From positions 1 to 26,564 of IMG/VR virus record IMGVR_UViG_3300005859_000008: a DNA stretch of 26,564 nucleotides, one strand, 5' to 3'. Made by a program: the position numbers and the translations under genes. Position 1 is the first letter of the stretch, and each line of letters begins with the position of its first letter. The notes beneath the pieces are model-generated. The model worked only from the letters and a program-made list of their open reading frames with translations. It did no database searches and was not told the origin of the DNA. This document shows positions 6,322 through 22,956 of the stretch, piece after piece.

Positions 6322-6350
6322 AATATAATTTTAATTATGACATTAAAAAG

Positions 6351-6530
6351 TTAATATACTCCTAAATCTTCAGAATTGTATATTCTTATTTTATTTTCTC
6401 TTATTTTTTCTGACAAAATTATTAGTCCGTTAGCTATTATTTCATTAATTTTCTCATTTCCATTTACATTTTCTATTTCAAAAATTACTTTAATAATTAT
6501 TTTATTCCCTTTCTTGGAATAAATTATCAT
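6351..6530 (-). CDS. Hypothetical protein (59 aa); absent from the ORF track
   Basis: Hand translation: MIIYSKKGNKIIIKVIFEIENVNGNEKINEIIANGLIILSEKIRENKIRIYNSEDLGVY. Fills the gap; divergent from 6595 around a shared TTTTAAA box. Confidence 0.6.
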   Translation of the reverse strand: MIIYSKKGNKIIIKVIFEIENVNGNEKINEIIANGLIILSEKIRENKIRIYNSEDLGVY

Positions 6531-6594
6531 AACTTAAAATAAGAATAAAAATGATTTTAAATATGTCATATTTCTAAACAGAATATGATTAGAT

Positions 6595-7116: not shown

Positions 7117-7203
7117 TTTGTATTTTTAAAAATTTCTAAATCGAAATTCAAAGATATTTTTATATTTGTCATAAAGGATAAATTGATTCGGGGAAACAAA
7201 AAA

Positions 7204-7773: not shown

Positions 7774-7790
7774 TGTGAAAATATGAATTT

Positions 7791-8726
7791 CTATATCTCA
7801 AGTTCTAATTCATCTTTTTCTTTCTTTATCTTTTTCTTTTCCTTTAAAATTTCATTTACAATTTTGTAATTTCTAATTAATTCAATTGTAAGGCTGTCAA
7901 GACCTATCTTTCTTAATTTGTTAGCATATCTTGTGTATTTATTGTCAATTTGCCATTTATTGTATACTAGAATATAAGCGTTCATAACTTCTAGAATTTT
8001 TCTGTTAGTCAAATCATATTCAAATGGAAAATGAATCTTGTCTAAAAATTCAAAAAGTTGTTCTTTTTCTTCTTCCGTAATTTTATACCTTTCTCTACTT
8101 GTTTTTTGATTTCCTACATATTTTCTTGTTCCATCAAACCAAAAAATCTCTCTATATGCCATAGTTTTGGAATATGTAGCTGTGTCCATACTATCCGCAA
8201 AATCGAAAGCTTGTAGAAAATATGGTGCAGACATTCCAAGGACATGTAGATAAGGGACTTTCCTTCTTACATAATAAACCCATGGAAATGTATAGATTAA
8301 AACTTTTAATTTGCTAGATGCTACAAGTCCTCCTATTGCAAAATAGTAAGTATATTGTTTGTAAAAATCTATAGCTTCATCTACATCTTGAATTGGATAG
8401 ATATGGATAACTGGAATAATTTTTTCTATCCATTCTATTTTTGTATACAAGTATTCAAAATATTGAAAATTTCGTTTGTCTAGAGGAGAAAACATACTTG
8501 CAATATCAAGAGAAAAAAAAGCATATGCATCTAATTTTTTGTATTTTTCTAGAATGTCTTTCACAGAAATATGTAGACCATATAATGCAATTTGGTAACC
8601 TCCGCTATCTATCCAAGTCTCATTTTTCCATGTCTTTTTTCTAAATCTTAACTGATTAATTAGAATCGGAAAGTCAGTCTTCAGAATATATGATGTTGTT
8701 GAACTTAGACCAAAGACAAGTTTCAT
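7791..8726 (-). CDS. tRNA-guanine transglycosylase (TGT)-fold protein, SIRV2 ORF310-like (311 aa)
   Basis: TGT-superfamily motifs IDSGGYQ, FSLD, IPVIH, IGGLV, HVLG, DSMD. Size and pairing with the permease match SIRV. Confidence 0.88.
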   Translation of the reverse strand: MKLVFGLSSTTSYILKTDFPILINQLRFRKKTWKNETWIDSGGYQIALYGLHISVKDILEKYKKLDAYAFFSLDIASMFSPLDKRNFQYFEYLYTKIEWIEKIIPVIHIYPIQDVDEAIDFYKQYTYYFAIGGLVASSKLKVLIYTFPWVYYVRRKVPYLHVLGMSAPYFLQAFDFADSMDTATYSKTMAYREIFWFDGTRKYVGNQKTSRERYKITEEEKEQLFEFLDKIHFPFEYDLTNRKILEVMNAYILVYNKWQIDNKYTRYANKLRKIGLDSLTIELIRNYKIVNEILKEKKKIKKEKDELELEI

Positions 8727-9919
8727 TATTGTTCTCCATTAATCACCTTCTTTCTTAAGACGTATATAATTCCTCCAATTAAAGGCAATAGTAATATTCT
8801 TAATATTGTATATATTAGATTTCCTTCTATTACGAAATTATAGAATATTGGGTTTTGAAGTCCTAGATAAAAGAATATAAATATCTGTAGTGCTAAACTT
8901 ATTATTACACTTAAAAATAATAATTTATTATTTGTTAATTTTAAAAATGTTAAACTTACAATTAAGAAATTCCAGAAAATGAACAATATACCAGTAAATC
9001 CAAATGAAATTGAAAATCCTAAAAGATTTTCTAAAACGTTAGCGATTGTATCAACAGTAAAGATTAACAATAAAATGTTAGGCGTAAGTTTTGTAAATTT
9101 TTCTGGGAGAATTCTATCAAATGTAAAGTTTTGAATTAAACGACTTTGAATTATAGCATTCACAAAAAGATAGCTTAGATACCAGATTGGAAATAAAGCA
9201 AACAATATATTCAAATTAGAAAAGCTATCTAATATTGATAATATTGTAACTACTAAATAACTTCCAAAATATCCAATTTTTATTGCTTTATTTACGTTCT
9301 TTACTTCTCCAGCTATATAACTAATTGCATTTATGAATAGAAACATAGACAAGTCAAATAGTAAGGCTGAAAGTAAGGTATTCGATATTGTGAAGTTTTG
9401 TATCTGGAAATGAAAATTTGAGACTGGGAGAAATATTGATACAAGTATCTGTAGAATAGCTAATCCGTCTACTATATAAGCATAAATTGATTTTCTAATT
9501 ATACTAATTATAGTTATTATAAATAATAATTCTGAAATTAGAAATTTATCAATTAGTGAAATATTAAAATTCATAAGTACTAAATTTGTTAGGACTGGAG
9601 CTGAGAATATATACGTTAGCCATAACGAGATTCCGAAAATTGTGTAGAATTTCGGGGAAAATGTATTTCTAATGTAAGCATAATCCCCACCGTTTAATGG
9701 AATTTTCTTGGTTAGAATATAATACATTACTAATAATGGAATTTCAAATATTGCTCCTAATATTACAGCAATTAACAAGTTTACATTTTTCATCATTTGA
9801 GAGACAAAAATTGGATAACTTATTCCGCTCAAAATTCCCATGTAAAGAAGATTGATAGAAAAAATATCTAATGAATTGAAATTTTTTATAATTCCTGAAC
9901 TTTGTCTTTTGAATTCCAT
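8726..9919 (-). CDS. APC-family amino acid permease-like membrane protein, SIRV2 ORF399-like (397 aa)
   Basis: Many TM segments; APC motifs PLNGGDYAYIRNTF and SYIAGEVKN; stop overlaps the TGT start (TAATG). Confidence 0.88.
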   Translation of the reverse strand: MEFKRQSSGIIKNFNSLDIFSINLLYMGILSGISYPIFVSQMMKNVNLLIAVILGAIFEIPLLVMYYILTKKIPLNGGDYAYIRNTFSPKFYTIFGISLWLTYIFSAPVLTNLVLMNFNISLIDKFLISELLFIITIISIIRKSIYAYIVDGLAILQILVSIFLPVSNFHFQIQNFTISNTLLSALLFDLSMFLFINAISYIAGEVKNVNKAIKIGYFGSYLVVTILSILDSFSNLNILFALFPIWYLSYLFVNAIIQSRLIQNFTFDRILPEKFTKLTPNILLLIFTVDTIANVLENLLGFSISFGFTGILFIFWNFLIVSLTFLKLTNNKLLFLSVIISLALQIFIFFYLGLQNPIFYNFVIEGNLIYTILRILLLPLIGGIIYVLRKKVINGEQ

Positions 9920-10039
9920 ATCTCAGTTCAAGTTTTATGACTAATTTAAGCCTTTTCAAAAATTTAAAGAAATACATTAATTATGAATTTTTTATTATAA
10001 TGATAATGGATATTTAATATTTAAAGTTTATAATTTCAT

Positions 10040-10465
10040 TTAAGAAAGAAATTTTAAAATGTCATTTGTATCTTTTAACAATTCTATTTTTTGTCTGGAA
10101 TAATTTTTCAGATGATAAAGTGCATGTGGAAATTTCGCATTTCCCATTCTATTCATAAATATCATTATTAAAGAATTTTGTTCATATAACATTCTAAACC
10201 AGGAAGGAGTAGGGTCAAATGGTAGATATAATAAAACTTCACTTCCATTTTTATTACTTTCTATAGCTTTTATTATAAATGGTTTTTTAATAGAAAATGG
10301 TGGGTTACAATAAGAATGATTTGGCCATAATTTTTCTACTGCATTGAATTTAGTTTTATCTAAACAAACGTCTATAAATTTTAATTCATTTGTAATAATA
10401 TTATAAACTGCTTCAGGTGTTGGTTTATTGTCATGTATAGCCCTTTTCGGATATTTAAGTGTCAT
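10040..10465 (-). CDS. Phage-type DNA N6-adenine methyltransferase (Dam-like, PF05869-type; 141 aa)
   Basis: PTPEAVY, IDVC, catalytic YCNPPFS, KA, then LYLPFDPTPSWF, in the order typical of the small phage Dam family. Own TTTAATTTGTC promoter. Confidence 0.82.
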   Translation of the reverse strand: MTLKYPKRAIHDNKPTPEAVYNIITNELKFIDVCLDKTKFNAVEKLWPNHSYCNPPFSIKKPFIIKAIESNKNGSEVLLYLPFDPTPSWFRMLYEQNSLIMIFMNRMGNAKFPHALYHLKNYSRQKIELLKDTNDILKFLS

Positions 10466-10554
10466 GGTTCTATTACATTTTTATTTTTATGACAAATTAA
10501 AACGTTATTTAAAATTTAAAGAAATAAAAATGTCCTAAAACATATATAATATTC

Positions 10555-10923
10555 ATGATAAGGGAATATAAACTAAGGAATAATGTAATTGTGAAGATAA
10601 ACGATAATAAGGCTGAGATAAATGTTAAGAACGAATATAAACTTTTTTTAACTTTATACAAAAATAATGTTATTGCAAAATATAAAGATGTTTCTTTAAC
10701 AATAAATTATGATAAATTTGATAGTGAAAAATTAGCTAAAAAAATACATGTTATAGTTAAACAGTCTCATAAATTTTCGATATCTCTAATTAATGAAGTT
10801 TTGGACTTAATTGTAATTGATAATTTATATAGTGATATTATTGAAGAAATTAAGGAATTAAAAGAGAAAAAAGATATTAATAAATTAAGGAAAGTTTACG
10901 ATTATTTAAGAGAGATGGAGTGA
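10555..10923 (+). CDS. Rudiviral hypothetical protein (122 aa; SIRV ORF94/95-like position)
   Basis: Clean ORF, Lys-rich, next to the GT4 gene as in SIRV. Confidence 0.75.
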   Translation: MIREYKLRNNVIVKINDNKAEINVKNEYKLFLTLYKNNVIAKYKDVSLTINYDKFDSEKLAKKIHVIVKQSHKFSISLINEVLDLIVIDNLYSDIIEEIKELKEKKDINKLRKVYDYLREME

Positions 10924-10927
10924 GATT

Positions 10928-11149
10928 ATGACAAGTTTTCAGGAACAACATTTCTATATAATTGTCAAGGAAGAATTAGGGATAATTTTAGCAGAATGTG
11001 TTAGGCATAGTCCGCCAGATTATGCTATTGGTATCAGAAATACTGAATATATAGATATTGTAGAAAAATTTACAGACAAAAAAGAAGCTGAGAAATTGTA
11101 TAGGAAAATGGTCTTTGAAAAACAAAAGGATAGTTTAAGAAATACTTAA
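10928..11149 (+). CDS. Hypothetical protein (73 aa)
   Basis: GGAGTGAG SD; coupled to the upstream ORF; convergent overlap with the GT4 stop. Confidence 0.7.
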   Translation: MTSFQEQHFYIIVKEELGIILAECVRHSPPDYAIGIRNTEYIDIVEKFTDKKEAEKLYRKMVFEKQKDSLRNT

Positions 11150-12210
11150 AGTCCGTCTAACGATTTAAAAAGTTGTTTTTTTACAGCTTCATAACTGAAG
11201 TTTTCTATCCAAAAGTTATAATTTTCCTCAATTTTTGCTTTATAATCATCTAAGTTATCCAGAACGTTAAGTATTTTATCTACAGCTTTTTCAACACACA
11301 TTTCCACGCCTTTTCCAATATGAATGGAATTATCTGGAAAAATTATCGGAAATTTACAGGAATCTACAAGTAAGTCTTGTAATTGTGGAGGAAAATATTC
11401 TTGCCATGCCCCGCCTTTTGTAGCTACAACCGGGATTTTTGATACAAAAGCTTCCAGACCATTTAACTCGAAACTTCCACCTCTACTAGTTAGTAGATAC
11501 AAGTCAGATATTCTATACATCTTCACAATATTGTCAAAATCTGTATTTCCAGTTATGTTAAACATTCTGAGGTCTTGAAAATCTGTCCTAGTCCATCCTG
11601 ACTTTACAAGAAAATAGATGTCATTTCTTTCTTTCTGAAGTTGTTGAGCAATTTTATGGAATATATCAGCTCCTTTTCTAAAATCTGAATGCCAAAGCGA
11701 GATAAAGATTAGTTTTATTTTCTTCTCATTTTTGATTTTCTCGATATAACGTATTTGTTCATCCACTTTTAGTTCTTCATCTTTAGCTAAAAGTCTTTCG
11801 TTAAAATTATGGACAACTTTGTAGATTGGAATTTTTAATCCAGAGTTCTTGAAAGCATTTACAGACCATTTAGAATTCACAATTATTCTATCTGCATAAT
11901 TATTTGCATAATCTATAAATTTCTCCGAAATTCTATCACTATCAGCTACTTCAACTCCTACAATTGCACTTGTTTTAGCCCTATATTGTTCAAAAAATGA
12001 AAATTCTACTTTTGTCCATTTCCACATAGAATAGAAAAAGGGGTGAATTATAGAAATTGGATGACGGAAAGGGGTAAATTGATAGAATGATAACGCTGGA
12101 ATTTCGTAAACTATATACTTTTCTTTTAGCATTTTTACATGTTCTTTTGCTACAAATTTGAAAGAAACGTCGTGATGTTGTGGATAAACGTAATAAATTG
12201 GAACTGTCAA
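11146..12210 (-). CDS. GT-B (GT4-like) glycosyltransferase, SIRV ORF356-like (354 aa)
   Basis: RKGAD, DLYLLTSRGGSFELNGLEA (E-x4-E variant of the GT4 motif), PVVAT; TTG start after GAGGA. Confidence 0.92.
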   Translation of the reverse strand: MTVPIYYVYPQHHDVSFKFVAKEHVKMLKEKYIVYEIPALSFYQFTPFRHPISIIHPFFYSMWKWTKVEFSFFEQYRAKTSAIVGVEVADSDRISEKFIDYANNYADRIIVNSKWSVNAFKNSGLKIPIYKVVHNFNERLLAKDEELKVDEQIRYIEKIKNEKKIKLIFISLWHSDFRKGADIFHKIAQQLQKERNDIYFLVKSGWTRTDFQDLRMFNITGNTDFDNIVKMYRISDLYLLTSRGGSFELNGLEAFVSKIPVVATKGGAWQEYFPPQLQDLLVDSCKFPIIFPDNSIHIGKGVEMCVEKAVDKILNVLDNLDDYKAKIEENYNFWIENFSYEAVKKQLFKSLDGL

Positions 12211-12217
12211 TTTGTCC

Positions 12218-12823
12218 TCACCAAGCTATTAATACAAATTCTGGAATATGTTTGAAAATTTGTGGAATATCTTCAAGTGTAAATTCCATTCTTTTTTCTC
12301 CACATGGAGTTTTTACATAATGTATAGTCCCTAATTTCAGAACGTTAAGATGTAGAATATGATCATGGATAAATATATCAATTGGAAATTCTTTGTAATA
12401 TTCTTTATCAAGATATGTATTTAATATAATTTCTAATATTGGAATTTGATTTTTCCTAAATATGTAATTTGTTCCAGAGCAAAACGGTCTAATTTCGTTA
12501 GCCCAACTATAATAAAGCCAATAACATAAAGTTATTATTCTATTTCCGGGATCAATTTCTCTAATTTTTGGGACTATTAAATCGCTATCTATAATTGCAA
12601 GGACGTCATCATCTTGATTTTGTGCAATTTCTAGAATTTTTAATAATTGTTTAGCTATTCTAACCCATCTAATTTCACTATTTGTTTCATTCCAAATTAT
12701 CTTATCATGAAATTTTTGTTCTAATTGTGGAGTTAAATCGTTAGACGTTTTATCGACAATTACGTAATCAAAATCTAGCTCTGGTAAATGTTTTGTATAT
12801 CCAACAAATGTAAAGACTTTCAT
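12218..12823 (-). CDS. GT-A-fold glycosyltransferase, SIRV1 ORF209/SIRV2 ORF176-like (201 aa)
   Basis: VIVD and LAIIDSDL (DxD) motifs; operonic with GT4; TTTAAAATTGTC promoter. Confidence 0.8.
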   Translation of the reverse strand: MKVFTFVGYTKHLPELDFDYVIVDKTSNDLTPQLEQKFHDKIIWNETNSEIRWVRIAKQLLKILEIAQNQDDDVLAIIDSDLIVPKIREIDPGNRIITLCYWLYYSWANEIRPFCSGTNYIFRKNQIPILEIILNTYLDKEYYKEFPIDIFIHDHILHLNVLKLGTIHYVKTPCGEKRMEFTLEDIPQIFKHIPEFVLIAW

Positions 12824-12880
12824 AATTACTTCTCAGTTTCATGACAATTTTAAATATTTTCAAACAAATGTGAAAGTGAC

Positions 12881-13029
12881 AACAATATGCTATATTAATA
12901 ATATAAGGAATATTGTGTTGTTTACATGTTTCCATGGGAATTTAAGAACAATAAGGGCAATTAATATACATAATATGATATATGAGATATATGGTTTTAT
13001 TTATGTCATTTTAGAAATTTACACTTATG
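12881..13029 (+). repeat. Left arm of a 149-bp inverted repeat (promoter region of the 265-aa gene)
   Basis: Ungapped reverse-complement match to 17710-17858; hand count 113/149; 22-bp exact core at 12962-12983. Confidence 0.85.
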
Positions 13030-13824
13030 AGTGTAACATATACATCTATATCGGAATTATTAGCCTCACCATTTCAAAGACTTACATCATCTATGTGGAA
13101 CACGGCAACACTTCTTCTAATACAACTTTACGAAACAGGAGGAAATGCTGTGACATCAATTCTAAAAAACGGAAACTTGACAATTCCAGGGTCAATAATT
13201 GCTAGTTCTGGAAATTTCTACGAAGAAATTTATGTAGATGGACAGCCAGTTCTTACAGAACAAGACCCAATATACATTGCTGGATTTATAGCTACAGCTA
13301 ATGAACAAATAAATCAAATTGTCTATTCAAATCAACAACTTTATTATGCAATTTTGAAACTTCCTGAAGAAATTTATAATATAATTTCACAAAATTTTGA
13401 TAATATTTCTAATTCAATTTATTCTGCAATTAATTCAATTTCTGAAAAAATAAGTTTTCCATTTGAAGATGCAATTTATTCTGTAATTTATGCTTTAACT
13501 TATTTCTATTTAGCTACAGTTAGTTTAGCTAAAACATTTAACAAACTTTCATTATATTTATCCCCTCCAACAATAGAAGGACTACAATTAGATATAGATA
13601 CAATACCTTCTCCACTTTATTCAGGCCCAACAATTGAAACTGTAAGAATAATCTTACAAAATTTAAGTAATCAAATAGTTTATATTGGAAATCAATTGTA
13701 TAATAATTTCCCAATTTTTCCTAATGACAGTATAGAATTACATGTTAATAATCCAAGTAATATTTACGCTTGGGCAACTGGAAAATGTAAAGTTTACGCT
13801 CTATTCGAAGTAGTACAGAGTTAG
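13027..13824 (+). CDS. Conserved rudiviral protein, SIRV ORF268/269-like, probably virion-associated (265 aa)
   Basis: Size and synteny with the methyltransferase; shares N- and C-terminal motifs with the ORF564-like protein. Confidence 0.85.
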   Translation: MSVTYTSISELLASPFQRLTSSMWNTATLLLIQLYETGGNAVTSILKNGNLTIPGSIIASSGNFYEEIYVDGQPVLTEQDPIYIAGFIATANEQINQIVYSNQQLYYAILKLPEEIYNIISQNFDNISNSIYSAINSISEKISFPFEDAIYSVIYALTYFYLATVSLAKTFNKLSLYLSPPTIEGLQLDIDTIPSPLYSGPTIETVRIILQNLSNQIVYIGNQLYNNFPIFPNDSIELHVNNPSNIYAWATGKCKVYALFEVVQS

Positions 13825-13832
13825 GTGATATT

Positions 13833-14375
13833 ATGCCTATAAATTTCAAAGATTATTTCTGTAAGTTAGAATGTTGTTATTGGCATGAATTTGAACAAGC
13901 TTATGGAAAATTAAATGTAAAAGATAGAACAGTTACGATAATTGGTAATGATTGTGGAAGTACAGTGTTATACTTTTTACTAAAAGGTGCTAAAAGAATT
14001 GTTGGATTTGAAAAAGAAGAAAAACTAAATCAGCTGTTCAAAGAAAAAGTTTGTAAAGACTTCAATATCTGTGACAAAGTTGAGATTCATGGGGAATGGA
14101 CTGGAAATCTATACCCAGACACTGACGTTCTAGTTATGGATTGTGAGGGTTGTGAGGCCAAGTTACTTGAAGTTAAGGCCGAACGAAGTGATGAACAAAG
14201 TTCATCACGAAGTGAGTCAAAACTTGATATTTCACAACTTCAAAAGTATAAACAGTATTGCATAGCCGTACATGATTGGACAGAAAATAGATTCGAATTA
14301 ATGAGAAAACTTTACGGAACAACTTTAACTTTTATAAGTGAAGATAATAGGGAATTTGTATTTTGTAAATTATGA
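13833..14375 (+). CDS. SAM-dependent FkbM-like methyltransferase, SIRV ORF158b-like, with a 20-aa insertion (180 aa)
   Basis: Motif I IIGNDCG, RIVGFE, VMDCEGCE (cf. FkbM KIDxEGxE); AGGTGA SD. Confidence 0.88.
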   Translation: MPINFKDYFCKLECCYWHEFEQAYGKLNVKDRTVTIIGNDCGSTVLYFLLKGAKRIVGFEKEEKLNQLFKEKVCKDFNICDKVEIHGEWTGNLYPDTDVLVMDCEGCEAKLLEVKAERSDEQSSSRSESKLDISQLQKYKQYCIAVHDWTENRFELMRKLYGTTLTFISEDNREFVFCKL

Positions 14376-16028
14376 AGAACAATAATTGTTTATAACTTTT
14401 GCATTTCCAGAAATATATATACCACCAGAATTCTTTTTACAAATTAAATTTTTAATTATTGCATAATCGTTAATTTTAATAATTCCAGAATTATTTTGAA
14501 TTTTTAATGTTATAATGTTTGAATTCCCATTTATATTAATAGTTCCAAGATTTTGATTAATTAATAAATTGTTTACATAAGAATTATTATTGATTTGAAT
14601 TGTTCCTAAATTATATTGTAAAATAAAAGAATTTACAGAACTAAAGTCTTGTAATTTTATAGTTCCATTATTAATATTCATTATAAGATTTGCAATTGTT
14701 CCATAAATAGTAATTGTTTGAAAATTATTATAAATTAGAAGATTTTTAACATAAACATTATTTTGAATTGGAATATCATCCATCAAATTTGCAATTAAGA
14801 CATTTAAAAATGTAGTTGTAGATTTTAATAAATTATTAAATTCATTACCATAACAACTTAACAAGAAATATTGATTATAATTAAAAGTTAAGAGTTGATT
14901 AACGTTATATACTATATTATCAAATTGTAAAGATTTTACGATTTCATTTGACTGGACATACGACATTCTTTTTTGTAATTGCATTATTGAAAAATTCGCT
15001 AATTCTATAATTGCATCAATTAGAGAATTGAAATAATCTGTAGTTAAAGGAAGTCCCTTTCTAGCTTTAATTAAAGGTGTAAATGCATATGGCTGAAAGT
15101 TTTCATAGAAATTATAGAAATCAAGAATTGCATTATATATATTTTGTGGGTATTGAAATTGAGACAAATAATTTATGTATTTATAAACACTGTATGCTAG
15201 ATAAAGGTCTTGTACAATTTCATTCCATAATTTTGATGAAATTAAAGAATATTTTTTTGGCGGAATTAATAATTTTGTAATTTGATAAAACGGTTTACAT
15301 AAAATAAATTTATAAGATATTTTACATTCATTTGGGAAAAGAATTGAATATGGCAAATGATTATTTTCTAAAAAATCTATAACTTGTTGATTTGCAAGAA
15401 ATTTTATATCTGTTGAAAAAAACGCACCGAAAAGGTGGCAATTACACGGTGTTATAAATTGTACAGACGTGTTATTCTGGATAAGAAATGCTTGACAAGT
15501 AGTAATTACTAAATAATTATTTAAATTGTCTAATGAAATAATTGAATAAATGGTATAATTACTACAACATGGTTGTGGTGTTGTAGATTGGATATTGTAA
15601 CCTTGACAAAACCCAGTTTTTTCTTGTTGATCATAATTACTTTGTATAGTCATATTTTGAACTGGGGAAATTGTAGTATTCTGAAAAGTCATAGTTAAAT
15701 TTGGAACAATTTGACAAGTTCCAACATTATAAAATTCAATTCCCTCAGGATAAATCAAAATTAACATATAATATCCTTGATAAAGTGATAAATCTACAAT
15801 AAAATTTTGTCCGACTTGAGCAAATCCAAATTCATCTGGATTTACACAAAAATAATGTCCATAACCAAAATTAAATGGATATTTTGAGAATAGAAATATA
15901 ACTAAAGAATTTACAGATAATGAAAATTGTAAAACATTAAAATTTACAGGATTCGATGTAAACATGGCTATTACTTCAAGAGATTGTACTGAAGGTAAAT
16001 TTAATTGTACACAATAATTTGAAGACAT
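14370..16028 (-). CDS. Probable virion/fibre-associated protein, SIRV ORF309/417-like, with C-terminal beta-solenoid (552 aa)
   Basis: Synteny downstream of the ORF564-like gene; GGTGA SD; five consecutive 20-aa-period NxGxIxI repeats at the C-terminus; Cys-rich. Confidence 0.8.
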   Translation of the reverse strand: MSSNYCVQLNLPSVQSLEVIAMFTSNPVNFNVLQFSLSVNSLVIFLFSKYPFNFGYGHYFCVNPDEFGFAQVGQNFIVDLSLYQGYYMLILIYPEGIEFYNVGTCQIVPNLTMTFQNTTISPVQNMTIQSNYDQQEKTGFCQGYNIQSTTPQPCCSNYTIYSIISLDNLNNYLVITTCQAFLIQNNTSVQFITPCNCHLFGAFFSTDIKFLANQQVIDFLENNHLPYSILFPNECKISYKFILCKPFYQITKLLIPPKKYSLISSKLWNEIVQDLYLAYSVYKYINYLSQFQYPQNIYNAILDFYNFYENFQPYAFTPLIKARKGLPLTTDYFNSLIDAIIELANFSIMQLQKRMSYVQSNEIVKSLQFDNIVYNVNQLLTFNYNQYFLLSCYGNEFNNLLKSTTTFLNVLIANLMDDIPIQNNVYVKNLLIYNNFQTITIYGTIANLIMNINNGTIKLQDFSSVNSFILQYNLGTIQINNNSYVNNLLINQNLGTININGNSNIITLKIQNNSGIIKINDYAIIKNLICKKNSGGIYISGNAKVINNYCSS

Positions 16029-16038
16029 TTTTTCACCA

Positions 16039-17712
16039 TTAGGTTAAAATTGTTATTTCTTGTGGTTGAGAATTTATAGGCATTAAATTATTTGGCGGAT
16101 AAGTCCTTACTCTCAACCAATAAACTATCATTCCATTTGGAGCATAAGATGCCTCATTATTTCCTACCATGATTTCAAAAGGCAGAGATGCTGTATTTGA
16201 CGCCTCAACGATATATCCAGTAGTAATTTGATAGTTTTGAAAAGTATAATATAATGTTGAAGTATAGATATGTGACCAAATTGAAACAGGAAATAAATTG
16301 TTAGAAGGTGTAGAAAGATTTCCGTAAAAAGAATTTCCACCTTGATTTGACCTTACTTCTGCATTATTTCCACCTTCAAAATCTAGAAGTGTATATGTCC
16401 CTCCTTGAGAAGGAAATCCGTAACTAGAAGATAAATAATTGCTAAATCCCACCATATTCCAGCCCCAAGAATCTCCTGATGGACTTGTTGATTGTGTTCC
16501 ATAATATTCAATTATAATTGGTGGAGAATACGAATTTACAGTAGCTATACCGTTTTCTCCTCCAGCTTCTGTAGTTCCGCCCTTTATTGTCACACCGTTA
16601 TTAAATGTTACAGTTCCGTTGCTCTGATATACATTTATTCCATTTGGAGATGAATTACCAACAAAATTCCAATAATCTACAAATACATTTTCACCATTAT
16701 CATATTGTGCATATACAGAAGTTAGTTGTGGTGCCATCCCAGTGTAAGGATATTGTATAGAATTTCTAACAAACATATATATAGTCAATGAACCATTAGC
16801 TGGAATTGAAATTGGTAAATTAATCCAAATATAAACATTTGTTAAATTAGAATTATAGCTTTCTATCCATGAATAAAGTGAAGTATTACAATTAATATCT
16901 AGACAAAATTGTAAATTTAAAAGTTGAGATGGATTGGATAAAATATTAGATAAATCTAGTTGTAATAATTGTTGAAATGGAGTTGGAGTTGGGTCTGATT
17001 GGTTGTTTGTTATAGTAATTGTATAAGCAGTTGTTGGACTTTGAATAAACCCAATCTCTAGACTTAATAAAGTTGGATCAGTAGCATTTAATTCAATTTC
17101 AGATGGAGAACTTGTTGTTATTTTTAAACAATTTTTAGGCATTAAATAAATCGCGTTATTTATCTGAACTGTAGAATTTCCTAAATTCTGAATTTGTATT
17201 TCTCTCCAAGTTTGTAGATAAGACGGGTCAAGATAATTCTTAATAAGTTCTTCAATAGTTGAAGTTCCAGAAAATGTAAATTGTGTTCCAGCAATTTGTG
17301 ACGGAGTTACAATTTTTGAAATTACTTTTGGAATCAAAAGTTGTATTTGTCTATATATTTTTGACAATTGTATTTGAAAATTTGGAATTTGTGTTATAAC
17401 ATTTTGTAATTCTATAGAAGGTTTAATAGACATATCTAGAAATGGTTGTTGTTTCCCCTGACCAAAAGTATAAGCTTGAGGTTGAGATAAATTATGTAAA
17501 ACGTTATATCCATTTACTTTTAAAGCTGAAACGTATAACATTTTTGCAATTATTTCATTTAGATTTTGTAAATTGTAATTTTGATAATATTGAAGAAGTT
17601 TTGCGGAACCATATTGATCCAAAAACAGAAGATTTTTGACAAAGTTATTCCAGTCCTGAAGTGTTAGATATTCTAATGGAAGTTTAAACTTGACTGGATA
17701 TGGTGTAGGCAT
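16039..17712 (-). CDS. Minor structural protein, SIRV2 ORF564-like, with DUF2341-like/beta-sandwich C-terminal region (557 aa)
   Basis: ITITNNQ..PTPFQQLL..YSWIES..IWINLP..IPAN..TIYM..YDNGENVF signature. Start placed at ATG 17712 because it is the exact mirror of ATG 13027 in the inverted repeat (the track gives TTG 17736). Confidence 0.85.
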   Translation of the reverse strand: MPTPYPVKFKLPLEYLTLQDWNNFVKNLLFLDQYGSAKLLQYYQNYNLQNLNEIIAKMLYVSALKVNGYNVLHNLSQPQAYTFGQGKQQPFLDMSIKPSIELQNVITQIPNFQIQLSKIYRQIQLLIPKVISKIVTPSQIAGTQFTFSGTSTIEELIKNYLDPSYLQTWREIQIQNLGNSTVQINNAIYLMPKNCLKITTSSPSEIELNATDPTLLSLEIGFIQSPTTAYTITITNNQSDPTPTPFQQLLQLDLSNILSNPSQLLNLQFCLDINCNTSLYSWIESYNSNLTNVYIWINLPISIPANGSLTIYMFVRNSIQYPYTGMAPQLTSVYAQYDNGENVFVDYWNFVGNSSPNGINVYQSNGTVTFNNGVTIKGGTTEAGGENGIATVNSYSPPIIIEYYGTQSTSPSGDSWGWNMVGFSNYLSSSYGFPSQGGTYTLLDFEGGNNAEVRSNQGGNSFYGNLSTPSNNLFPVSIWSHIYTSTLYYTFQNYQITTGYIVEASNTASLPFEIMVGNNEASYAPNGMIVYWLRVRTYPPNNLMPINSQPQEITILT

Positions 17713-17858
17713 TAAATACATTTTATAAATTGACAAAAATAAAGTGACATAACTTATATATCATATTATGTATATTACTTGTCATTACTATTCTTAACTT
17801 TTTACGTTAAATTAGAAACAACACAATATACCTTATATTATATATATGGCATATTGTT
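17710..17858 (-). repeat. Right arm of the 149-bp inverted repeat (promoter region of the ORF564-like gene)
   Basis: Mirror of 12881-13029 (paired coordinates sum to 30739). Confidence 0.85.
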
Positions 17859-17865
17859 AGTCTTT

Positions 17866-18681
17866 TCAAGTTTTGAAATTTTTCATATATTCTATAACTT
17901 TCATAATATCAAGATGTGTATCTTTTTGGATTTGTAATATGTAATTTTGGTCTTGTAAAATCTGTAATATTTTATCTTTGTTTTGTACAAAGAAATTATA
18001 AAGTTCTGGATGATTTTGATACCAATCATTTTTTCCATTTTTTAAATCATTATCAATTTCTCCAAGAAGAAACGCTAATTGTCTAACATCAATTTCTTTT
18101 CTAACTGATTTAAATATTACTCCTAGTACAGAGAAATAGGGTTTATACTTATAGAGACACATGTTAAAATTTCTTCCTTCTTTACAACTTACTTTCTTCG
18201 GATTATAAATTTTAGCTACTAAACCCTCAAGTCTTTCTTTAGTTATAATTTCAATTAAATCATCTATGTCAAGATAAAATTCTGGAAACCAATTCCAAAT
18301 TGTACTATCTAATCTTAAGGGATGTACATATTTTCCAAGCTCTTTGTCAAAGACATCATATATGATAAATTGTGGAATTTCATTTGTATGGATTTGTAAT
18401 GCTGACGTCTTTTTATGTACAAGTTCCCCATGAATTATATATTGTGAATGTTCTTTTAAATAATTTACAACTTCCTCAATTCCTGGAACTTTCATAAAGA
18501 GTTCTTGAAAAGATTTGTCATGAGGTATATCTTTTCTAGTATTTATTTCTAATATTCCTTGATATTTCAAACAAATATGTGTTCCGTCATATTTTATTTG
18601 ATAATATACATCTTCTTCTAGATTTTTTAAATCTTGATAACTTATATTTTCAGCTTCGTAATGACATAGATTTGTTTGCAT
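17866..18681 (-). CDS. ATP-dependent RNA-ligase-type nucleotidyltransferase (271 aa)
   Basis: Motif I KYDG, Ia TR, III HGELV, IIIa FIIYDV, IV EGLVAK, V YKYK. Short helical-looking C-terminus with no obvious OB fold. Own TAAATAAATTTGTC promoter. Confidence 0.85.
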   Translation of the reverse strand: MQTNLCHYEAENISYQDLKNLEEDVYYQIKYDGTHICLKYQGILEINTRKDIPHDKSFQELFMKVPGIEEVVNYLKEHSQYIIHGELVHKKTSALQIHTNEIPQFIIYDVFDKELGKYVHPLRLDSTIWNWFPEFYLDIDDLIEIITKERLEGLVAKIYNPKKVSCKEGRNFNMCLYKYKPYFSVLGVIFKSVRKEIDVRQLAFLLGEIDNDLKNGKNDWYQNHPELYNFFVQNKDKILQILQDQNYILQIQKDTHLDIMKVIEYMKNFKT

Positions 18682-18712
18682 GGATAAGAATAAAAAATTA
18701 CGACAAATTTAT

Positions 18713-21700
18713 TTAATAATTACTTCTTAACTGCCAATTTAATAGAATTAATTGTATCTCCTCATCTGTAAGTCCATATTTTTTCAGTTGTTGTAGATAT
18801 GATTGAGCTGTATTTAGATCAATTTTATGTTTCTCAAACAACAAATTGATTGTTTCTATAATTTGACTTACATATCTACTAACTCTTCTATTTCTAGCAT
18901 ATTCCATATAAGTATTCTGTAAATCTGATGGAATTTGGAATTCTGAAAATACTTTTTGTAGAAGTTGATTCGGATTTGATATATATTCAGAAATTTCTAA
19001 AGCTTTGGAAGGTGTAATATAAAGTTCTTGGTAACCCATTATTATTTTCTTAATTTGGGCTGATAATTTCAAAACACCAAGAAATGTCTCAGTAAATCCA
19101 TATTGTTTCATTAGATTTTCTAATTGTGTATTCTGGATTCCATAAATTAGAGTATCTATATATTCCGTCTTTAAAGTATGTACATAAACGCCTATAAGTT
19201 CATGTTGATAAACATCTAGATATAGATTTATAAATTCTGAAGGAATAAATGATAATTCTACAAGTTTCTGAATTGGATAATTATACTTAAATGCCTTTTC
19301 TATTTCTTCAATTTTCGGGATATATCTTTTCCAAAGTTCTAGACCAAAACTAGTTACATATTGGTCTAACAAAATCTTTATTTGATTGTCTGGAATTCCT
19401 AATTTTTTCAATTCAGATTCTGCATTTCCTAAGTTTACGGGAATTTTCCCGACTCTGTAAAGTTGTCCTTCTATAATGTTTGAAATTATTGTATGTATAT
19501 TGTAGAATGTTGGAGTATAAGTTTGTACAAACAAATTAGCTACATTTTTTTCCATTCCTAATTTCTCAAGTTCTTTAACGGCATTATCTGGCTTAATTTC
19601 TAGATTTCTTAGTAATGATTTTATATACTCAAGTCCTATTTCAAGTTGGTAAATTTGAGTTTCTGGAATAATCTCATAATCTACAACTTCCTTCGGTAAT
19701 TTCTTGATATCTGTAACTATACCATGTCTTGCTAAAGTTCTATAATAATCCACAATTTTTGGAAAAACATATTCAAAGTAGAACTTTTTACTATACAAAT
19801 CAACAGCTGTATTATCCTTAAGAATCTTTGATAATTCTGTAGCTAATTGTTTCTCATCATAATACAAATTCTTAGCTAAAGTTTCTATATAAGATAAATG
19901 TAATTTAGTAATTGGAATATTATAATCATTTTGTATTATCTCATTTACAAGATAATCGTTAATTTTCAATTTTCTTAATTCAGAATCAACAACTTTTGAG
20001 TCAACTAAGAAGTTTCTCAATTGTTCTTTTATAACTGATAATGTTGTAGATATTGTAATTTCTTGATTTACATAATTGGAAAATATATCTTCAAATTCCT
20101 TAATTACGCCAATTGAATGTAATTGTTTTTTAATCTCATCAAATGACAGATATCCTTTCTTTCCAAGATTTTCTATCTGTGAAATCTGGTATTTTATTAA
20201 ACGTGATGTTTGATATTCAAAAATTACTTCAGAAATTATAGATGAATCAAATCCAATAGTTTTTAAATCTTTTTCAGCATTTCCAGGAGTAATAACAAAG
20301 TTTTCTAGTTTAAATTGAAATTCCTTTAGGAGATATTGTAATCTAATATATTCTAATTCAAAGTCAAGAACTTCTAGAGCTACCTTTTCGTTAAATTTAT
20401 TAGCTTTTAACGTTTCTTTTATTTTCTTTTCGTCAAAAATTCCTAATCTAGTAATTTGTTGTAATTGTCTAAGTAAAAGTTCATTAGCATATACAAGTTG
20501 TGATTGTTCTATCATTACGTCAAAAACGTCTTGGACTTCTTTAGGATAATTTAACTCCTTAAATAATTTCTTGATTGTGGATTCTAAATATTTTAAGTCT
20601 ACATATGGTCTTCCGAAATTTGATAAGGCACGTGATAATAGACTTCGTAAAAATTGTCTCACAATTCTTTGTACAGCATATTTATACTCAAGAGAGAAAA
20701 CTTTTAGAAATAAATCTCTACCAGCTAAATTAACATTCTGTATAATCTCGTTATAAGCGTCTTCTGGAGAAACTACAAATTGTCTTATTCCTTGTTCTAC
20801 AGCTCTTTGTAGAAGTTTAGCTGTCTGATTTTGATACATTAATTTAGCAGTTTTTGGAGTTATTAAGTTATTAAATGCATATTGAGAAACTGAAGAAATA
20901 TCTAAAATTCCATATTGAGAAGCTTGAATAACATCGCGGATATTTACAGATTTAAATAATGGATTTCTGGGTACAAAATCATCTATTGGAGATTCAAGAT
21001 AAGCGTTAGTAAACCATGCTGGATAACCTGTCAGAAGTATTGTTTCCCTAAGGTGGTCTTTAATCTCATCAAATGATCTTACAGCTACCCAATTCGCAAT
21101 TAATTGGAAAGGCGGGTCTGCAAACGGTAAATCCCCAAGTCCAATTTCGTTAAAAATTTCTCTAGCCGAAATCTTGAAATCCGAAACAAAAGGTTCCTTA
21201 ATAAATTCTCTAAGTGTTTTTTCAGCCTCTTCTCTAACTTCTTTTAAAAAATCAACAGCAGAATCAGCAAATGCCTCTACAATTTCTCCAAATTTTATCG
21301 GGACTTTCCCGCCCAATCCAACTGGAGATAAGTCAATTTCAATTTCTGGAAGAATTTTTGACAATTTTTCCGTAATTTTTGGTAAAAACTTTCCAATTAC
21401 AATTGGTGTAGCAAAAGGTGTAATAAATTGTGCAATTTGAGAAATTCCAGCTCCAATATGACTCATATTCTGTCCAAATCCAGTTAGAAAATCTACAGCA
21501 ATTCCAGCTAATATTCCTGAAAATGCATTAGCTATACCAGTGAAAAATCCGTAAGCGTCATTAACGAACTGAGACGCTATATTTGCCAGGTCTTGGAATA
21601 TGCCTACAATTTGTTGTTCTAGCCATGTTAGAAATCCAGTTATTGCGGGAATTGCGGTTTGTACAAAATTTTGTAGAACTTGTAAGAAATTGTTAGCAAT

Positions 21701-21889
21701 TTTTTGCATAAATGTTGGAATATCTGAAATTGCTTGACCTAAGAAACTTGCAATATTTTCAATATCTTTAACAATTGTATTAAAAAAGTTTATAAAGTCA
21801 GAAGCTAAAAAATTTGTAAAATTTTCGAGAGCTGACAATTCATCTGAAAAAAATGTTCCTAAATCTCCTAAATCCAATATGAAACTCAT
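18713..21889 (-). CDS. Large terminal (tail) fibre structural protein, SIRV ORF1070-like (1058 aa)
   Basis: Size, amphipathic helical N-terminus, repeated helical xLKxLG units, synteny with the resolvase and ORF564. Confidence 0.92.
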   Translation of the reverse strand: MSFILDLGDLGTFFSDELSALENFTNFLASDFINFFNTIVKDIENIASFLGQAISDIPTFMQKIANNFLQVLQNFVQTAIPAITGFLTWLEQQIVGIFQDLANIASQFVNDAYGFFTGIANAFSGILAGIAVDFLTGFGQNMSHIGAGISQIAQFITPFATPIVIGKFLPKITEKLSKILPEIEIDLSPVGLGGKVPIKFGEIVEAFADSAVDFLKEVREEAEKTLREFIKEPFVSDFKISAREIFNEIGLGDLPFADPPFQLIANWVAVRSFDEIKDHLRETILLTGYPAWFTNAYLESPIDDFVPRNPLFKSVNIRDVIQASQYGILDISSVSQYAFNNLITPKTAKLMYQNQTAKLLQRAVEQGIRQFVVSPEDAYNEIIQNVNLAGRDLFLKVFSLEYKYAVQRIVRQFLRSLLSRALSNFGRPYVDLKYLESTIKKLFKELNYPKEVQDVFDVMIEQSQLVYANELLLRQLQQITRLGIFDEKKIKETLKANKFNEKVALEVLDFELEYIRLQYLLKEFQFKLENFVITPGNAEKDLKTIGFDSSIISEVIFEYQTSRLIKYQISQIENLGKKGYLSFDEIKKQLHSIGVIKEFEDIFSNYVNQEITISTTLSVIKEQLRNFLVDSKVVDSELRKLKINDYLVNEIIQNDYNIPITKLHLSYIETLAKNLYYDEKQLATELSKILKDNTAVDLYSKKFYFEYVFPKIVDYYRTLARHGIVTDIKKLPKEVVDYEIIPETQIYQLEIGLEYIKSLLRNLEIKPDNAVKELEKLGMEKNVANLFVQTYTPTFYNIHTIISNIIEGQLYRVGKIPVNLGNAESELKKLGIPDNQIKILLDQYVTSFGLELWKRYIPKIEEIEKAFKYNYPIQKLVELSFIPSEFINLYLDVYQHELIGVYVHTLKTEYIDTLIYGIQNTQLENLMKQYGFTETFLGVLKLSAQIKKIIMGYQELYITPSKALEISEYISNPNQLLQKVFSEFQIPSDLQNTYMEYARNRRVSRYVSQIIETINLLFEKHKIDLNTAQSYLQQLKKYGLTDEEIQLILLNWQLRSNY

Positions 21890-22411: not shown

Positions 22412-22621
22412 TTAGGATTTTTCTTCTTCCTCTACTTTCACTTGCATTTTTCTCATTTCTTTAACAATTTTTACAACTTCTAAAGCTTTTTGGAAAACTT
22501 CAGATTTTCTAACATTTTCATCATCACATGTCGCTAAAGCCATAGTCAAATCGTCAAGAGCTAGATATAGTTTAGCTATTGTCTCTGTATTCGAATTTGA
22601 CTTTCTTTTGTTTTCTGACAT
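22412..22621 (-). CDS. Conserved rudiviral helical protein, SIRV ORF69/70-like (69 aa)
   Basis: Overlaps the 3' end of the resolvase gene, as in SIRV; size match. Confidence 0.75.
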   Translation of the reverse strand: MSENKRKSNSNTETIAKLYLALDDLTMALATCDDENVRKSEVFQKALEVVKIVKEMRKMQVKVEEEEKS

Positions 22622-22937
22622 CTTGAGTCAGATTATAAATTATGACACTTTTATGTTTTTTATAATGTACAATTACTAACGGTCTACATGAACAAAAACT
22701 AAACATCTCACAAAATTCAAACAGTTTTTCTATTTGAAAAATATCTACAATAACGAAATCTTTAGATGTGGATTTTACTTCGATTGGAAAAATTGTATTA
22801 TCTTTCGTAGCTATGATATCTGGAATAGCCTGTTTTCCAGTTCCAGATACTGGTATTCTGATAGCGTTATAACCATTTTTATCTAAAAACTCTAATGTTT
22901 TATATTCATAATATTTTCCAGATTGTCTAATATTCAT
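22572..22937 (-). CDS. hjc: Archaeal-type Holliday junction resolvase (Hjc/Hjr, SIRV ORF121-like; 121 aa)
   Basis: GKYYE, RIPVSG, PDIIA, IEVKST (PD-(D/E)xK) motifs; ATG 22937. Confidence 0.95.
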   Translation of the reverse strand: MNIRQSGKYYEYKTLEFLDKNGYNAIRIPVSGTGKQAIPDIIATKDNTIFPIEVKSTSKDFVIVDIFQIEKLFEFCEMFSFCSCRPLVIVHYKKHKSVIIYNLTQDVRKQKKVKFEYRDNS

Positions 22938-22956
22938 CAAAACAAATTTAGAAATT

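What the first reader, a model, noticed from the sequence alone, without database searches (positions are those of the whole stretch)
12881..17858. 5-kb virion-gene block bounded by a 149-bp ungapped inverted repeat
Seen: 12881-13029 is the reverse complement of 17710-17858 (hand count 113/149). It includes 39/43 at the distal end and an exact 22-mer TAATATACATAATATGATATAT at 12962-12983/17756-17777. Each arm ends on the ATG of an inward-pointing gene, and the distal part is itself quasi-palindromic (AACAATAT...ATATTGTGTT). The non-coding arms look better conserved than the paralogous coding sequences they feed. Inference: (a) a long co-regulatory element kept alike by selection or gene conversion, or (b) recombination arms that let the 265-aa/MTase/552-aa/557-aa block invert, changing which fibre-type gene follows the ORF1070-ligase transcript. 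No invertase is visible, so host recombination plus viral Hjc would be the route.
Basis: partly seen in the sequence, partly recalled or inferred. Interest (0 to 1): 0.75.

Follow-up and report, generated by a model that had tools for sequence, protein, structure and literature searches.

The report
Twin promoters facing each other
The 149-base inverted repeat is real, but it is two copies of a standard rod-shaped-archaeal-virus promoter, with its regulator-binding palindromes, driving two gene pairs that point at each other; it is not a DNA flip switch.

Summary
12881-13029 is the reverse complement of 17710-17858 at 113/149, with an exact 22-mer and 39/43 at the distal end. It is by far the best inverted match in the window.

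The window is a partial rudivirus contig, about 75% identical to the Yellowstone SIRVs. Each arm is a complete upstream region. It carries a distal 43-bp palindrome, a GAACA box, a 20-bp near-palindromic operator (the 22-mer), a TATA box followed by the rudiviral GTC, and the ATG about 20 nt later.

The proximal ~90 nt of this module sits upstream of both orthologous genes (SIRV2 ORF269 and ORF564) in every SIRV-type genome examined. In SIRV2 it also sits at the capsid, ORF399, ORF335 and ORF110 promoters.

The unusual length in this window comes from a distal operator-like element. That element is normal on the right side and was copied to the left side only in this lineage.

About 30 related genomes and contigs all show the same gene orientation. 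No recombinase is present, and a flip would not change which promoter feeds which gene.

So co-regulation is supported and inversion is not. The 265-aa and 557-aa proteins are not detectably paralogous. The binding factor is unknown; host Sta1 is a positional lead only. This is an ordinary feature, a new instance of a known kind.

The parts
12881..12923 (+). Left arm, distal 43-bp quasi-palindrome (a second, operator-like element)
   Evidence: It matches the right copy at 39/43. It contains 1-mismatch matches to the operator core at 12892 and 12901. On the left side it is present only in the window, L024, L036 and L040.
12946..12950 (+). GAACA box upstream of the operator
   Evidence: This column block is conserved in the 20-promoter alignment A2.
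12962..12983 (+). Left arm, proximal operator (the exact 22-mer). It is a 20-bp near-palindrome. The ATATACATAATAT core starts at 12964, 63 nt before the ATG.
   Evidence: Exact duplicate of the right copy. The palindrome pairs at 7-10 of 10 positions in 28 distinct variants, with symmetric double changes. It is conserved upstream of every ORF269 and ORF564 homologue.
12995..13008 (+). TATA-like box (12995-13004) followed by GTC(A) (13005-13008), centred about 27 nt before the ATG
   Evidence: Read from the sequence and alignment A2. The GTC element downstream of the TATA box is described for SIRV1/2 promoters (PMC5569661).
13027..13824 (+). 265-aa gene, homologue of SIRV2 gp42/ORF269, first gene of the left-arm operon
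   Evidence: tblastn 68% to gp42; phrog_7221.
13833..14375 (+). SAM-dependent methyltransferase (SIRV2 gp41/ORF158a homologue)
   Evidence: phrog_5108; tblastn 69%. Its stop overlaps the stop of the 552-aa gene tail to tail.
14370..16028 (-). 552-aa gene, related over its C-terminal part to SIRV2 gp40/ORF309, second gene of the right-arm operon
   Evidence: phrog_10791; tblastn. It is replaced by a divergent allele in the otherwise 99% identical contig L036.
16039..17712 (-). 557-aa DUF2341 protein (SIRV2 gp39/ORF564 homologue; homologues are annotated as structural). Its C-terminal half is hypervariable.
   Evidence: Pfam DUF2341; phrog_7548; identity profile against L024.
17731..17744 (-). 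Right arm TATA-like box (17735-17744) and GTC(A) (17731-17734)
   Evidence: Mirror position of the left arm (coordinates sum to 30739).
17756..17777 (-). Right arm, proximal operator (the exact 22-mer)
   Evidence: Here it has the variant that is typical of the left locus in the Yellowstone SIRVs.
17816..17858 (-). Right arm, distal 43-bp palindrome, starting 8 nt after the stop of the ligase-like gene
   Evidence: The right-side copy is conserved in L024, L020, L017 and L041. The similarity to SIRV1/2/3 is weak: the SIRV1 local alignment scored within the range of the shuffled controls. Hairpin z = -3.6. Start-to-start spacing to the proximal operator is 72 nt in both arms.
12842..12857 (-). 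Divergent promoter of the 201-aa/glycosyltransferase operon (TATA plus GTCA on the minus strand). It lies next to the left arm but is not part of the repeat.
   Evidence: Sequence. The block is conserved in all left intergenic regions.

Best explanation
The two arms are two copies of one rudiviral promoter type, placed head to head around two convergent operons. The left arm drives the 265-aa gene and the methyltransferase. The right arm drives the 557-aa and 552-aa genes.

Each arm carries, in order:
- a distal 43-bp palindrome;
- a GAACA box;
- a 20-bp near-palindromic operator (the 22-mer);
- a TATA box followed by the rudivirus-specific GTC;
- the ATG about 20 nt later, which implies a leaderless or short-leader mRNA.

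A dimeric DNA-binding factor is inferred to recognise the palindromes and give both operons the same timing and level. In SIRV2 the capsid, ORF399, ORF335 and ORF110 genes carry the same operator, so they would belong to the same set. The factor is not identified.

What is shown: the anatomy, the conservation at both loci, the reuse of the module at other promoters, and the fixed orientation of the block.

What is inferred: promoter activity, protein binding and co-regulation.

The repeat is inverted only because the two transcription units point at each other. In SRV the same two promoter types are in direct orientation. The repeat is unusually long here because the distal element, normally found only on the right side, was copied to the left side in this lineage.
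For: Gene map and conservation:
- Gene order and strands are identical in all SIRV-type genomes.
- The proximal ~90 nt shows the same blocks at nearly fixed distance from the ATG upstream of both genes in 18 genomes.
- In SIRV2 the same blocks occur at gp14, gp26 (capsid), gp28 and gp32. In the window they occur at the gp32 homologue, at 25861.

Operator:
- The core ATATWCATWATAT, with up to 1 mismatch, is found 19 times in SIRV2 against 3.5 expected, and 13 times in the window against 2.1 expected.
- Palindromy is kept in 28 variants, with symmetric double changes at two pair positions.

Core promoter:
- The TATA plus GTC arrangement fits the published SIRV promoter description.

Left-right similarity:
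- It is about 0.66-0.70 in all genomes, while orthologous left-left and right-right comparisons reach 0.8-1.0. This points to an old duplication under constraint.

Distal element:
- It is conserved on the right side in several lineages and is present on the left side only in the window's lineage.

Wider context:
- In SRV, the homologues of the 557-aa and 265-aa genes each have an operator-plus-TATA promoter on the same strand.
- Repeated promoter modules are common in this genome; five early-type copies lie at 1156-3486.
Against: - No transcription start sites, footprints or expression data exist for this virus, and Kessler 2004 (the SIRV transcription map) could not be read.
- The binding factor is unknown. 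The published SvtR consensus has at least 3 mismatches in each arm, and the aCcr1 box is absent.
- The Sta1 consensus does match the arms, but it is loose, at about 10 matches per kb.
- The window's homologue of ORF399 lacks the operator, so the set of regulated genes is not identical between viruses.
- Palindromes would also fit a DNA or RNA hairpin role.
Confidence: 0.8

Rival explanations
1. The arms are recombination substrates. Host homologous recombination, with viral Hjc, flips the 4.7-kb interior and switches which gene follows the 1058-aa/ligase transcript.
For: An inverted repeat with a 22-nt exact core flanks the block. An Hjc resolvase gene is present at 22572-22940. Inversion between inverted gene-length repeats (pilA1/pilA2) is reported for S. 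islandicus chromosomes (PMC9319562). Gene orientation in this region does differ between rudivirus genera.
Against: - Every contig examined has the parental junctions (ligase or 1058-aa gene, arm, 557-aa gene; and 201-aa gene, arm, 265-aa gene). This covers about 25 genomes and four more contigs with the distal element, among them three contigs from the same metagenome.
- The arms are only 76% identical, and in relatives they shrink to 31-100 nt.
- No invertase or integrase is found.
- The promoters lie in the arms, so a flip leaves each gene behind an equivalent promoter and there is no on/off logic.
- The difference between genera is an inversion of the 265-aa/MTase unit plus a swap of the 552/557 order, with breakpoints that are not the two arms.
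Confidence: 0.03
2. The similarity is kept up mainly by gene conversion between the two arms (concerted evolution), not by selection on binding sites.
For: - The window's left-right identity (0.77 over 88 nt) is the highest of 18 genomes.
- Its right operator carries the variant that is typical of the left locus elsewhere, giving the exact 22-mer.
- The distal element was copied to the left arm in this lineage.
- Other upstream modules also move between these intergenic regions, for example SIRV11 left against L013 right.
- Within-genome left-right identity slightly exceeds between-genome identity (0.68 against 0.66, permutation p about 0.01, genomes not independent).
Against: - Left copies group with left copies and right with right. 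Window and L024 are 0.97 identical left-left and 0.83 right-right, against 0.77-0.80 left-right. The distal and middle segments also sort by locus.
- Conservation is patchy: operator, TATA and GTC are conserved and the spacers vary. That is the pattern of a binding-site footprint.
- The same motifs are kept at four further promoters that are not part of any inverted pair.
Confidence: 0.15
3. The palindromes act as nucleic-acid hairpins. The distal element would be a terminator or RNA-stability hairpin for the 1058-aa/ligase transcript, or a cruciform, rather than a protein-binding site.
For: The right distal element starts 8 nt after the ligase stop and folds better than all 200 shuffles (z = -3.6). 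Palindrome arms show symmetric double changes.
Against: - The left copy lies in a divergent intergenic region, where no upstream transcript ends, and it folds no better than chance (z = -1.6).
- The proximal operators have no fold signal (z about 0.2).
- No T-run follows the hairpin.
- The best pairing register differs between the window and L017 while the central sequence is conserved.
- No Rfam family matches.
Confidence: 0.07

Closest known systems
SIRV1/SIRV2 promoters 134 (capsid) and 399, the promoters used to isolate the host activator Sta1 (PMC1635249)
   Same: The architecture is the same: a palindromic ATATACATWATAT... element starting about 70 nt before the ATG, then the TATA box, then a short leader. 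The published Reg2 oligo maps to -40..-11 of the SIRV1 capsid gene. The second footprint is described as about 30 nt upstream of that, which is where the palindrome lies.
   Different: Those are single promoters, not an inverted pair. Sta1 binding to the palindrome is my inference from the spacing, because the figure is not held. The Sta1 consensus ATNT-N8-WNAT is too loose to be diagnostic.
Rudiviral TATA-plus-GTC core promoter (Kessler et al. 2004, as summarised in PMC5569661)
   Same: Both arms have a TATA-like box immediately followed by GTC.
   Different: That description, as far as I could read it, covers the core promoter only. It does not cover the upstream palindromes or the pairing of the ORF269 and ORF564 promoters.
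Repeated early-gene / anti-defence regulatory sequence of rudiviruses (PMC11065993)
   Same: The principle is the same: one long regulatory module reused in front of many genes of one temporal class. The window has five such copies at 1156-3486.
   Different: The sequence, the genes (small terminal genes) and the presumed regulator (Aca8) are all different.
Invertible DNA segments (Mu G segment with Gin, Salmonella Hin; recombinational inversion between pilA1/pilA2 in S. islandicus, PMC9319562)
   Same: An inverted repeat brackets a gene block that includes a likely receptor-binding protein.
   Different: There is no recombinase, no second orientation in any relative, no promoter or alternative coding end inside the block that a flip would reconnect, and the arms are short and 76% identical.

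Membership tests
Rudiviral TATA-GTC core promoter | TATA-like box about 25-30 nt upstream of the transcript or gene start | tested here: met
   12995-13004 and 17735-17744 are centred about 27 nt before the ATGs.
Rudiviral TATA-GTC core promoter | GTC trinucleotide directly downstream of the TATA box | tested here: met
   13005-13007 and 17732-17734. The feature is described in PMC5569661.
Rudiviral TATA-GTC core promoter | Experimentally mapped transcription start | not testable with these tools
   No transcript data exist for this contig, and Kessler 2004 is not held.
Invertible DNA segment / phase-variation switch | Inverted repeats flanking the segment | tested here: met
   113/149.
Invertible DNA segment / phase-variation switch | Recombinase (invertase or integrase) encoded in or next to the segment | tested here: not met
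   Pfam scans of 28 ORFs found none; only Hjc is present.
Invertible DNA segment / phase-variation switch | Both orientations present in populations or relatives | tested here: not met
   Every SIRV-type genome and contig shows one orientation. Reads could not be examined.
Invertible DNA segment / phase-variation switch | Inversion changes expression or the coding sequence | tested here: not met
   The promoters lie in the arms and the coding sequences start at the arm ends. A flip would put equivalent promoters in front of the same genes (anatomy).
Sta1-activated viral promoter (PMC1635249) | 16-bp ATNT-N8-WNAT sites in the core promoter and about 30 nt upstream | tested here: inconclusive
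   Matches occur at 12964 and 13003 on the left and at 17775 and 17740 on the right. They are positionally equivalent to -70 and -31 of SIRV1 promoter 134. The consensus occurs about 10 times per kb.
Sta1-activated viral promoter (PMC1635249) | Sta1 binding and activation | not testable with these tools
   Needs EMSA, footprinting or in vitro transcription.
SvtR operator (PMC5569661) | ATnnTTCAAnAnnnnnAAAATG | tested here: not met
   The best match in either arm has 3 mismatches out of 13 specified bases.
aCcr1 / gp21 box (PMC9976892) | AGTATTA | tested here: not met
   No exact match in either arm.

The most novel reading that the evidence does not exclude
The 20-bp palindrome, with a second operator-like palindrome 72 bp upstream, may define a morphogenesis regulon shared across the SIRV/SRV clade. 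It would cover the capsid, glycosyltransferase, ORF399, ORF110, ORF564 and ORF269 genes, under a regulator not yet assigned. That regulator could be host Sta1 bound at two sites on the same DNA face, or an unknown viral factor. The conserved promoter arms may in addition serve as homology anchors for swapping the hypervariable 557/552 receptor-type cassette between co-infecting viruses. A swap of this kind is seen in contig L036.
Probability: 0.3. Interest if true: 0.45.

Novelty: new member of a known kind. Interest (0 to 1): 0.25.

Why it matters
The finding removes a tempting but unsupported idea, a fibre-gene flip switch in an archaeal virus. In its place it gives a usable promoter map: a conserved palindromic operator that links six rudiviral genes, the capsid gene among them.

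That operator is a concrete target for pull-down and footprinting in the SIRV2 model system, where regulation of middle and late genes is still poorly understood.

The work also shows how this region really varies. The 557/552 genes are exchanged as a cassette, and whole transcription units have been reoriented between genera. Reversible inversion is not seen.

Tried and rejected
- **Paralogy of the genes fed by the arms.** BLASTP and profile-profile comparison of 265 aa against 557 aa, and of 552 aa against 557 aa, show none.
- **Solved structures.** There are no sequence relatives for the 265-aa or 557-aa families.
- **Rfam.** Nothing relevant in 12000-18800.
- **Known operator motifs.** SvtR and aCcr1 do not fit. 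The Sta1 Reg2 oligo does not contain the palindrome; it maps to the core promoter.
- **Papers not held.** Kessler 2004 and Guilliere 2009 could not be read. Okutan 2013 was not found in the library. Published start sites and SvtR targets for ORF562/ORF268 could therefore not be checked.
- **Polarising the rearrangement between genera.** Outgroups (SMRV1, ARV1, ARV3, SSRV1) were tried, but their gene order is too scrambled and they lack the operator module. Which arrangement is ancestral stays open.
- **Expression timing of gp39 and gp42.** Several SIRV2 papers were searched and nothing usable was found.
Full report
**1. The observation**

The repeat is real. 12881-13029 matches the reverse complement of 17710-17858 at 113 of 149 positions without gaps. 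The repeat finder extends it to 179 nt at 73%, 12866-13044 against 17695-17873.

Over all inverted diagonals of the window, the best 149-nt score per diagonal averages 62.6 (sd 4.3). This pair reaches 114.

The exact 22-mer (12962-12983 / 17756-17777) and the distal 43-mer (39/43) each occur only at these two places, with none expected in shuffles. Both arms end on the ATG of an inward-pointing gene.

**2. Context**

The window is the whole contig IMGVR_UViG_3300005859_000008. It is a partial rudivirus genome, about 75% identical in DNA to the Yellowstone SIRVs.

Genes, with their SIRV2 counterparts where there is one:

| Window coordinates | Strand | Product | SIRV2 counterpart |
|---|---|---|---|
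| 11146-12210 | - | glycosyltransferase | ORF356 |
| 12218-12823 | - | 201 aa | ORF176 |
| 13027-13824 | + | 265 aa | ORF269 |
| 13833-14375 | + | SAM methyltransferase | ORF158a |
| 14370-16028 | - | 552 aa | ORF309 (C-terminal part only) |
| 16039-17712 | - | 557 aa, DUF2341 | ORF564 |
| 17866-18681 | - | 271 aa, ligase-like | none |
| 18713-21889 | - | 1058 aa | ORF1070 |

The left arm lies in the divergent intergenic region between the 201-aa and 265-aa genes. The right arm fills the space between the ligase stop and the 557-aa start. The two operons they feed converge, and their stop codons overlap at 14370-14375.

**3. What the arms are**

I compared the upstream regions of the ORF269 and ORF564 homologues from SIRV1-5 and SIRV8-11, from isolate V60 (left region only), and from 15 further metagenomic contigs. 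The same layout recurs at both loci at nearly fixed distance from the ATG:

- a GAACA box;
- a 20-23 bp element ATATACATWATAT.AT.TATWAG;
- a short TnTG;
- a TATA box of the form TTTATTTWT;
- GTC(A);
- about 20 nt, then the ATG.

The GTC directly after the TATA box is the virus-specific promoter element reported for SIRV1 and SIRV2 (PMC5569661).

In the window these parts sit at 12946-12950, 12962-12983, 12995-13004 and 13005-13008. The mirror positions on the right are 17731-17793.

The 20-bp element is a palindrome. In 28 distinct variants, 7 to 10 of the 10 symmetric pairs are complementary. Two pair positions show symmetric double changes: A:T to T:A at pair 4/17, and A:T or T:A at pair 8/13. 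That pattern is expected for the site of a dimeric protein.

**4. The module is not specific to these two genes**

In SIRV2 the operator core is found 19 times, with up to one mismatch, against 3.5 expected. The same module lies upstream of gp14 (ORF399), gp26 (ORF134, major capsid protein), gp28 (ORF335 glycosyltransferase), gp32 (ORF110), gp39 (ORF564) and gp42 (ORF269).

In the window the count is 13 against 2.1 expected, and the module also precedes the gp32 homologue at 25861. The inverted repeat is therefore two members of a promoter family that happen to face each other.

The window also holds a second repeated promoter family. Five copies of a 75-nt module lie at 1156-3486 in front of small ORFs. 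It resembles the repeated early-gene regulatory sequence described for rudiviruses (PMC11065993).

**5. Why the repeat is so long here**

In most relatives the inverted match is shorter: 31 nt in SIRV2, 85 nt in SIRV11 and 100 nt in V60. In the Yellowstone SIRVs the right intergenic region is only 81-84 nt.

The distal 43-mer is a second, operator-like palindrome. Its central sequence is conserved on the right side in L024, L020, L017 and L041 (28/30 with L017) and only weakly with SIRV1/2/3.

On the left side it exists only in the window and its closest relatives (L024, L036, L040). Their left intergenic region is about 72 nt longer than in other SIRVs. The simplest reading is a lineage-specific copy from right to left, anchored in the shared proximal module.

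In both arms the distal and proximal elements start 72 nt apart.

**6. Selection or conversion**

Over the proximal 88 nt, left-right identity is 0.66-0.70 in nearly all genomes. Orthologous left-left and right-right comparisons reach 0.8-1.0 within clades. Window against L024 gives 0.97 left-left and 0.83 right-right, against 0.77-0.80 left-right. Copies therefore sort by locus.

Within-genome left-right identity is only marginally higher than between-genome identity (0.68 against 0.66).

Conservation is concentrated in the operator, TATA and GTC blocks. This fits an old duplication held by selection on binding sites, with occasional patch transfer. Three traces of such transfer are:

- the window's right operator carries the variant typical of the left locus in the Yellowstone SIRVs, which produces the exact 22-mer;
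- the distal element moved to the left arm in this lineage;
- a different 96-nt module is shared between the left region of SIRV4/5/11, the region upstream of the ligase gene in SIRV11, and the right region of L013.

**7. The inversion hypothesis**

A tblastn map of eight window proteins on all fetched loci shows one arrangement: 1058 > (ligase) > 557 > 552 > <MTase <265 | 201 > GT. It holds in every SIRV-type genome or contig long enough to tell. These include two other contigs from the same metagenome.

A scan of the viral and metagenome collections for the distal element found four further contigs. All have parental junctions.

No recombinase is encoded; Pfam finds only Hjc at 22572-22940.

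The promoters lie in the arms and the coding sequences begin at the arm ends. A flip would therefore put an equivalent promoter in front of each operon and change nothing except which gene receives read-through from the ligase transcript.

I could not examine reads, so rare inversion by host recombination over the 22-nt core is not strictly excluded. There is no evidence for it and no functional logic.

**8. How the region actually varies**

*Cassette exchange.* Contig L036 is 99% identical to the window from 3801 to 14441. After that point it carries 552- and 557-type genes only 30-38% identical in protein. Against L024, the flanks are about 90% identical while the C-terminal half of the 557-aa gene drops to 45-51%.

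*Rearrangement between genera.* In SRV and SBRV1 all these genes lie on one strand, in the order 1058 > 552-like > 557-like > 265-like > MTase > 201-like > GT. In SRV the 557-like and 265-like genes each have their own TATA promoter: the 265-like one carries an exact operator core and the 557-like one a related palindrome, both on the same strand. The pair is inverted in the SIRV clade because the promoter-265-MTase unit has the opposite orientation there. The breakpoints of that difference are the 201|265 intergenic region and the MTase|552 junction, not the two arms.

More distant rudiviruses (SMRV1, ARV1, ARV3, SSRV1) have a scrambled order and lack the module. Which arrangement is ancestral could not be decided.

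**9. Who binds**

This is not known. The SvtR consensus and the aCcr1 box do not fit.

The host activator Sta1 was isolated with SIRV1 promoters 56, 134 and 399. It protects two regions of about 20 bp on promoter 134, one in the core promoter and one about 30 nt upstream (PMC1635249).

I mapped the published Reg2 oligo to -40..-11 of the SIRV1 capsid gene. The palindrome starts at -70 and is one of three upstream matches (-130, -82, -70) to the Sta1 consensus; it is the one whose distance from the core site best fits the reported ~30 nt. Both arms have consensus matches at the equivalent two positions.

The consensus is loose, at about 10 matches per kb, and the footprint figure is not available to me. 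Sta1 is therefore a lead (I put it near 0.35), not a result.

**10. Other checks**

- The 265-aa and 557-aa proteins, and the 552-aa and 557-aa proteins, are not detectably related.
- No Rfam family matches the region.
- The right distal palindrome folds better than chance as a single strand (z = -3.6). The left one and the operators do not. A hairpin role is unlikely to be the main function.

**11. Verdict**

The repeat is real and non-random. It is a pair of homologous, regulated promoters of a family that rudiviruses of the SIRV/SRV clade reuse at several genes. It is lengthened in this lineage by a copied distal operator.

The co-regulation reading is supported and the invertible-block reading is not. 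It is a new instance of a known kind of feature. Interest is modest, apart from the well-defined palindromic operator whose regulator remains to be identified.

Noticed in passing
window 7-247 and 461-654: About 14 tandem 8-nt units (AAATTCCT) lie at the left contig end, with a 97-nt tandem pair nearby. This looks like part of a rudiviral terminal repeat region.
   Followed up: no
window 1156-3486: Five copies of a 75-nt promoter-like module, plus 107-211-nt repeat families, sit in front of small ORFs. They resemble the repeated early-gene / anti-defence regulatory sequence described for rudiviruses (PMC11065993).
   Followed up: partly
window 6595-7116 and 7183-7773: Two adjacent ORFs (173 and 196 aa) share a 106-nt repeat at 75% (6993-7098 against 7608-7713). 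They are probably tandem paralogues.
   Followed up: no
L036 (OGCG01001043.1) against window 3801-14441: This metagenomic contig is 99% identical to the window up to about 14441. Beyond that point it carries 552/557-type genes only 30-38% identical in protein. That is a swap of the likely receptor-binding cassette, with a breakpoint at the convergent gene junction.
   Followed up: partly
window 16100-16700: The C-terminal half of the 557-aa gene is only 45-51% identical to the closest relative L024, while the flanks are about 90% identical. It is a hypervariable domain.
   Followed up: partly
L002 (SIRV11) 2392-2464 and 8337-8409: SIRV11 has a second inverted repeat (73 nt, 71%) between the left intergenic region and the region upstream of the ligase-like gene. 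It lies in a 96-nt insert shared by SIRV4/5/11 and partly by the right region of L013. Upstream modules move between these intergenic regions.
   Followed up: partly
window 22902-22914; L032 (SIRV2) 19330-19342: An exact operator-core 13-mer lies inside the start of the Hjc gene, on the opposite strand, at the same place in both viruses. It may be a coding constraint or an internal site.
   Followed up: no
window 17866-18681: The 271-aa ligase-like gene has borderline Pfam matches (RNA_ligase and DNA_ligase_A_M). It is present in the window and the Yellowstone SIRVs and absent from SIRV1/2/3, L017, L018 and L028.
   Followed up: no
L044 (SRV), L045 (SBRV1), L046-L049: The orientation and order of the large structural genes differ between rudivirus genera. 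The 557-like gene is divergent from the 1058-like gene in ARV1 and SMRV1 and co-directional with it in ARV3 and SSRV1. The 265/MTase unit is co-directional with its neighbours in SRV and SBRV1.
   Followed up: partly
window 9920-10039: The window's homologue of SIRV2 ORF399 (8726-9919) lacks the palindromic operator that its SIRV1 and SIRV2 counterparts carry.
   Followed up: no
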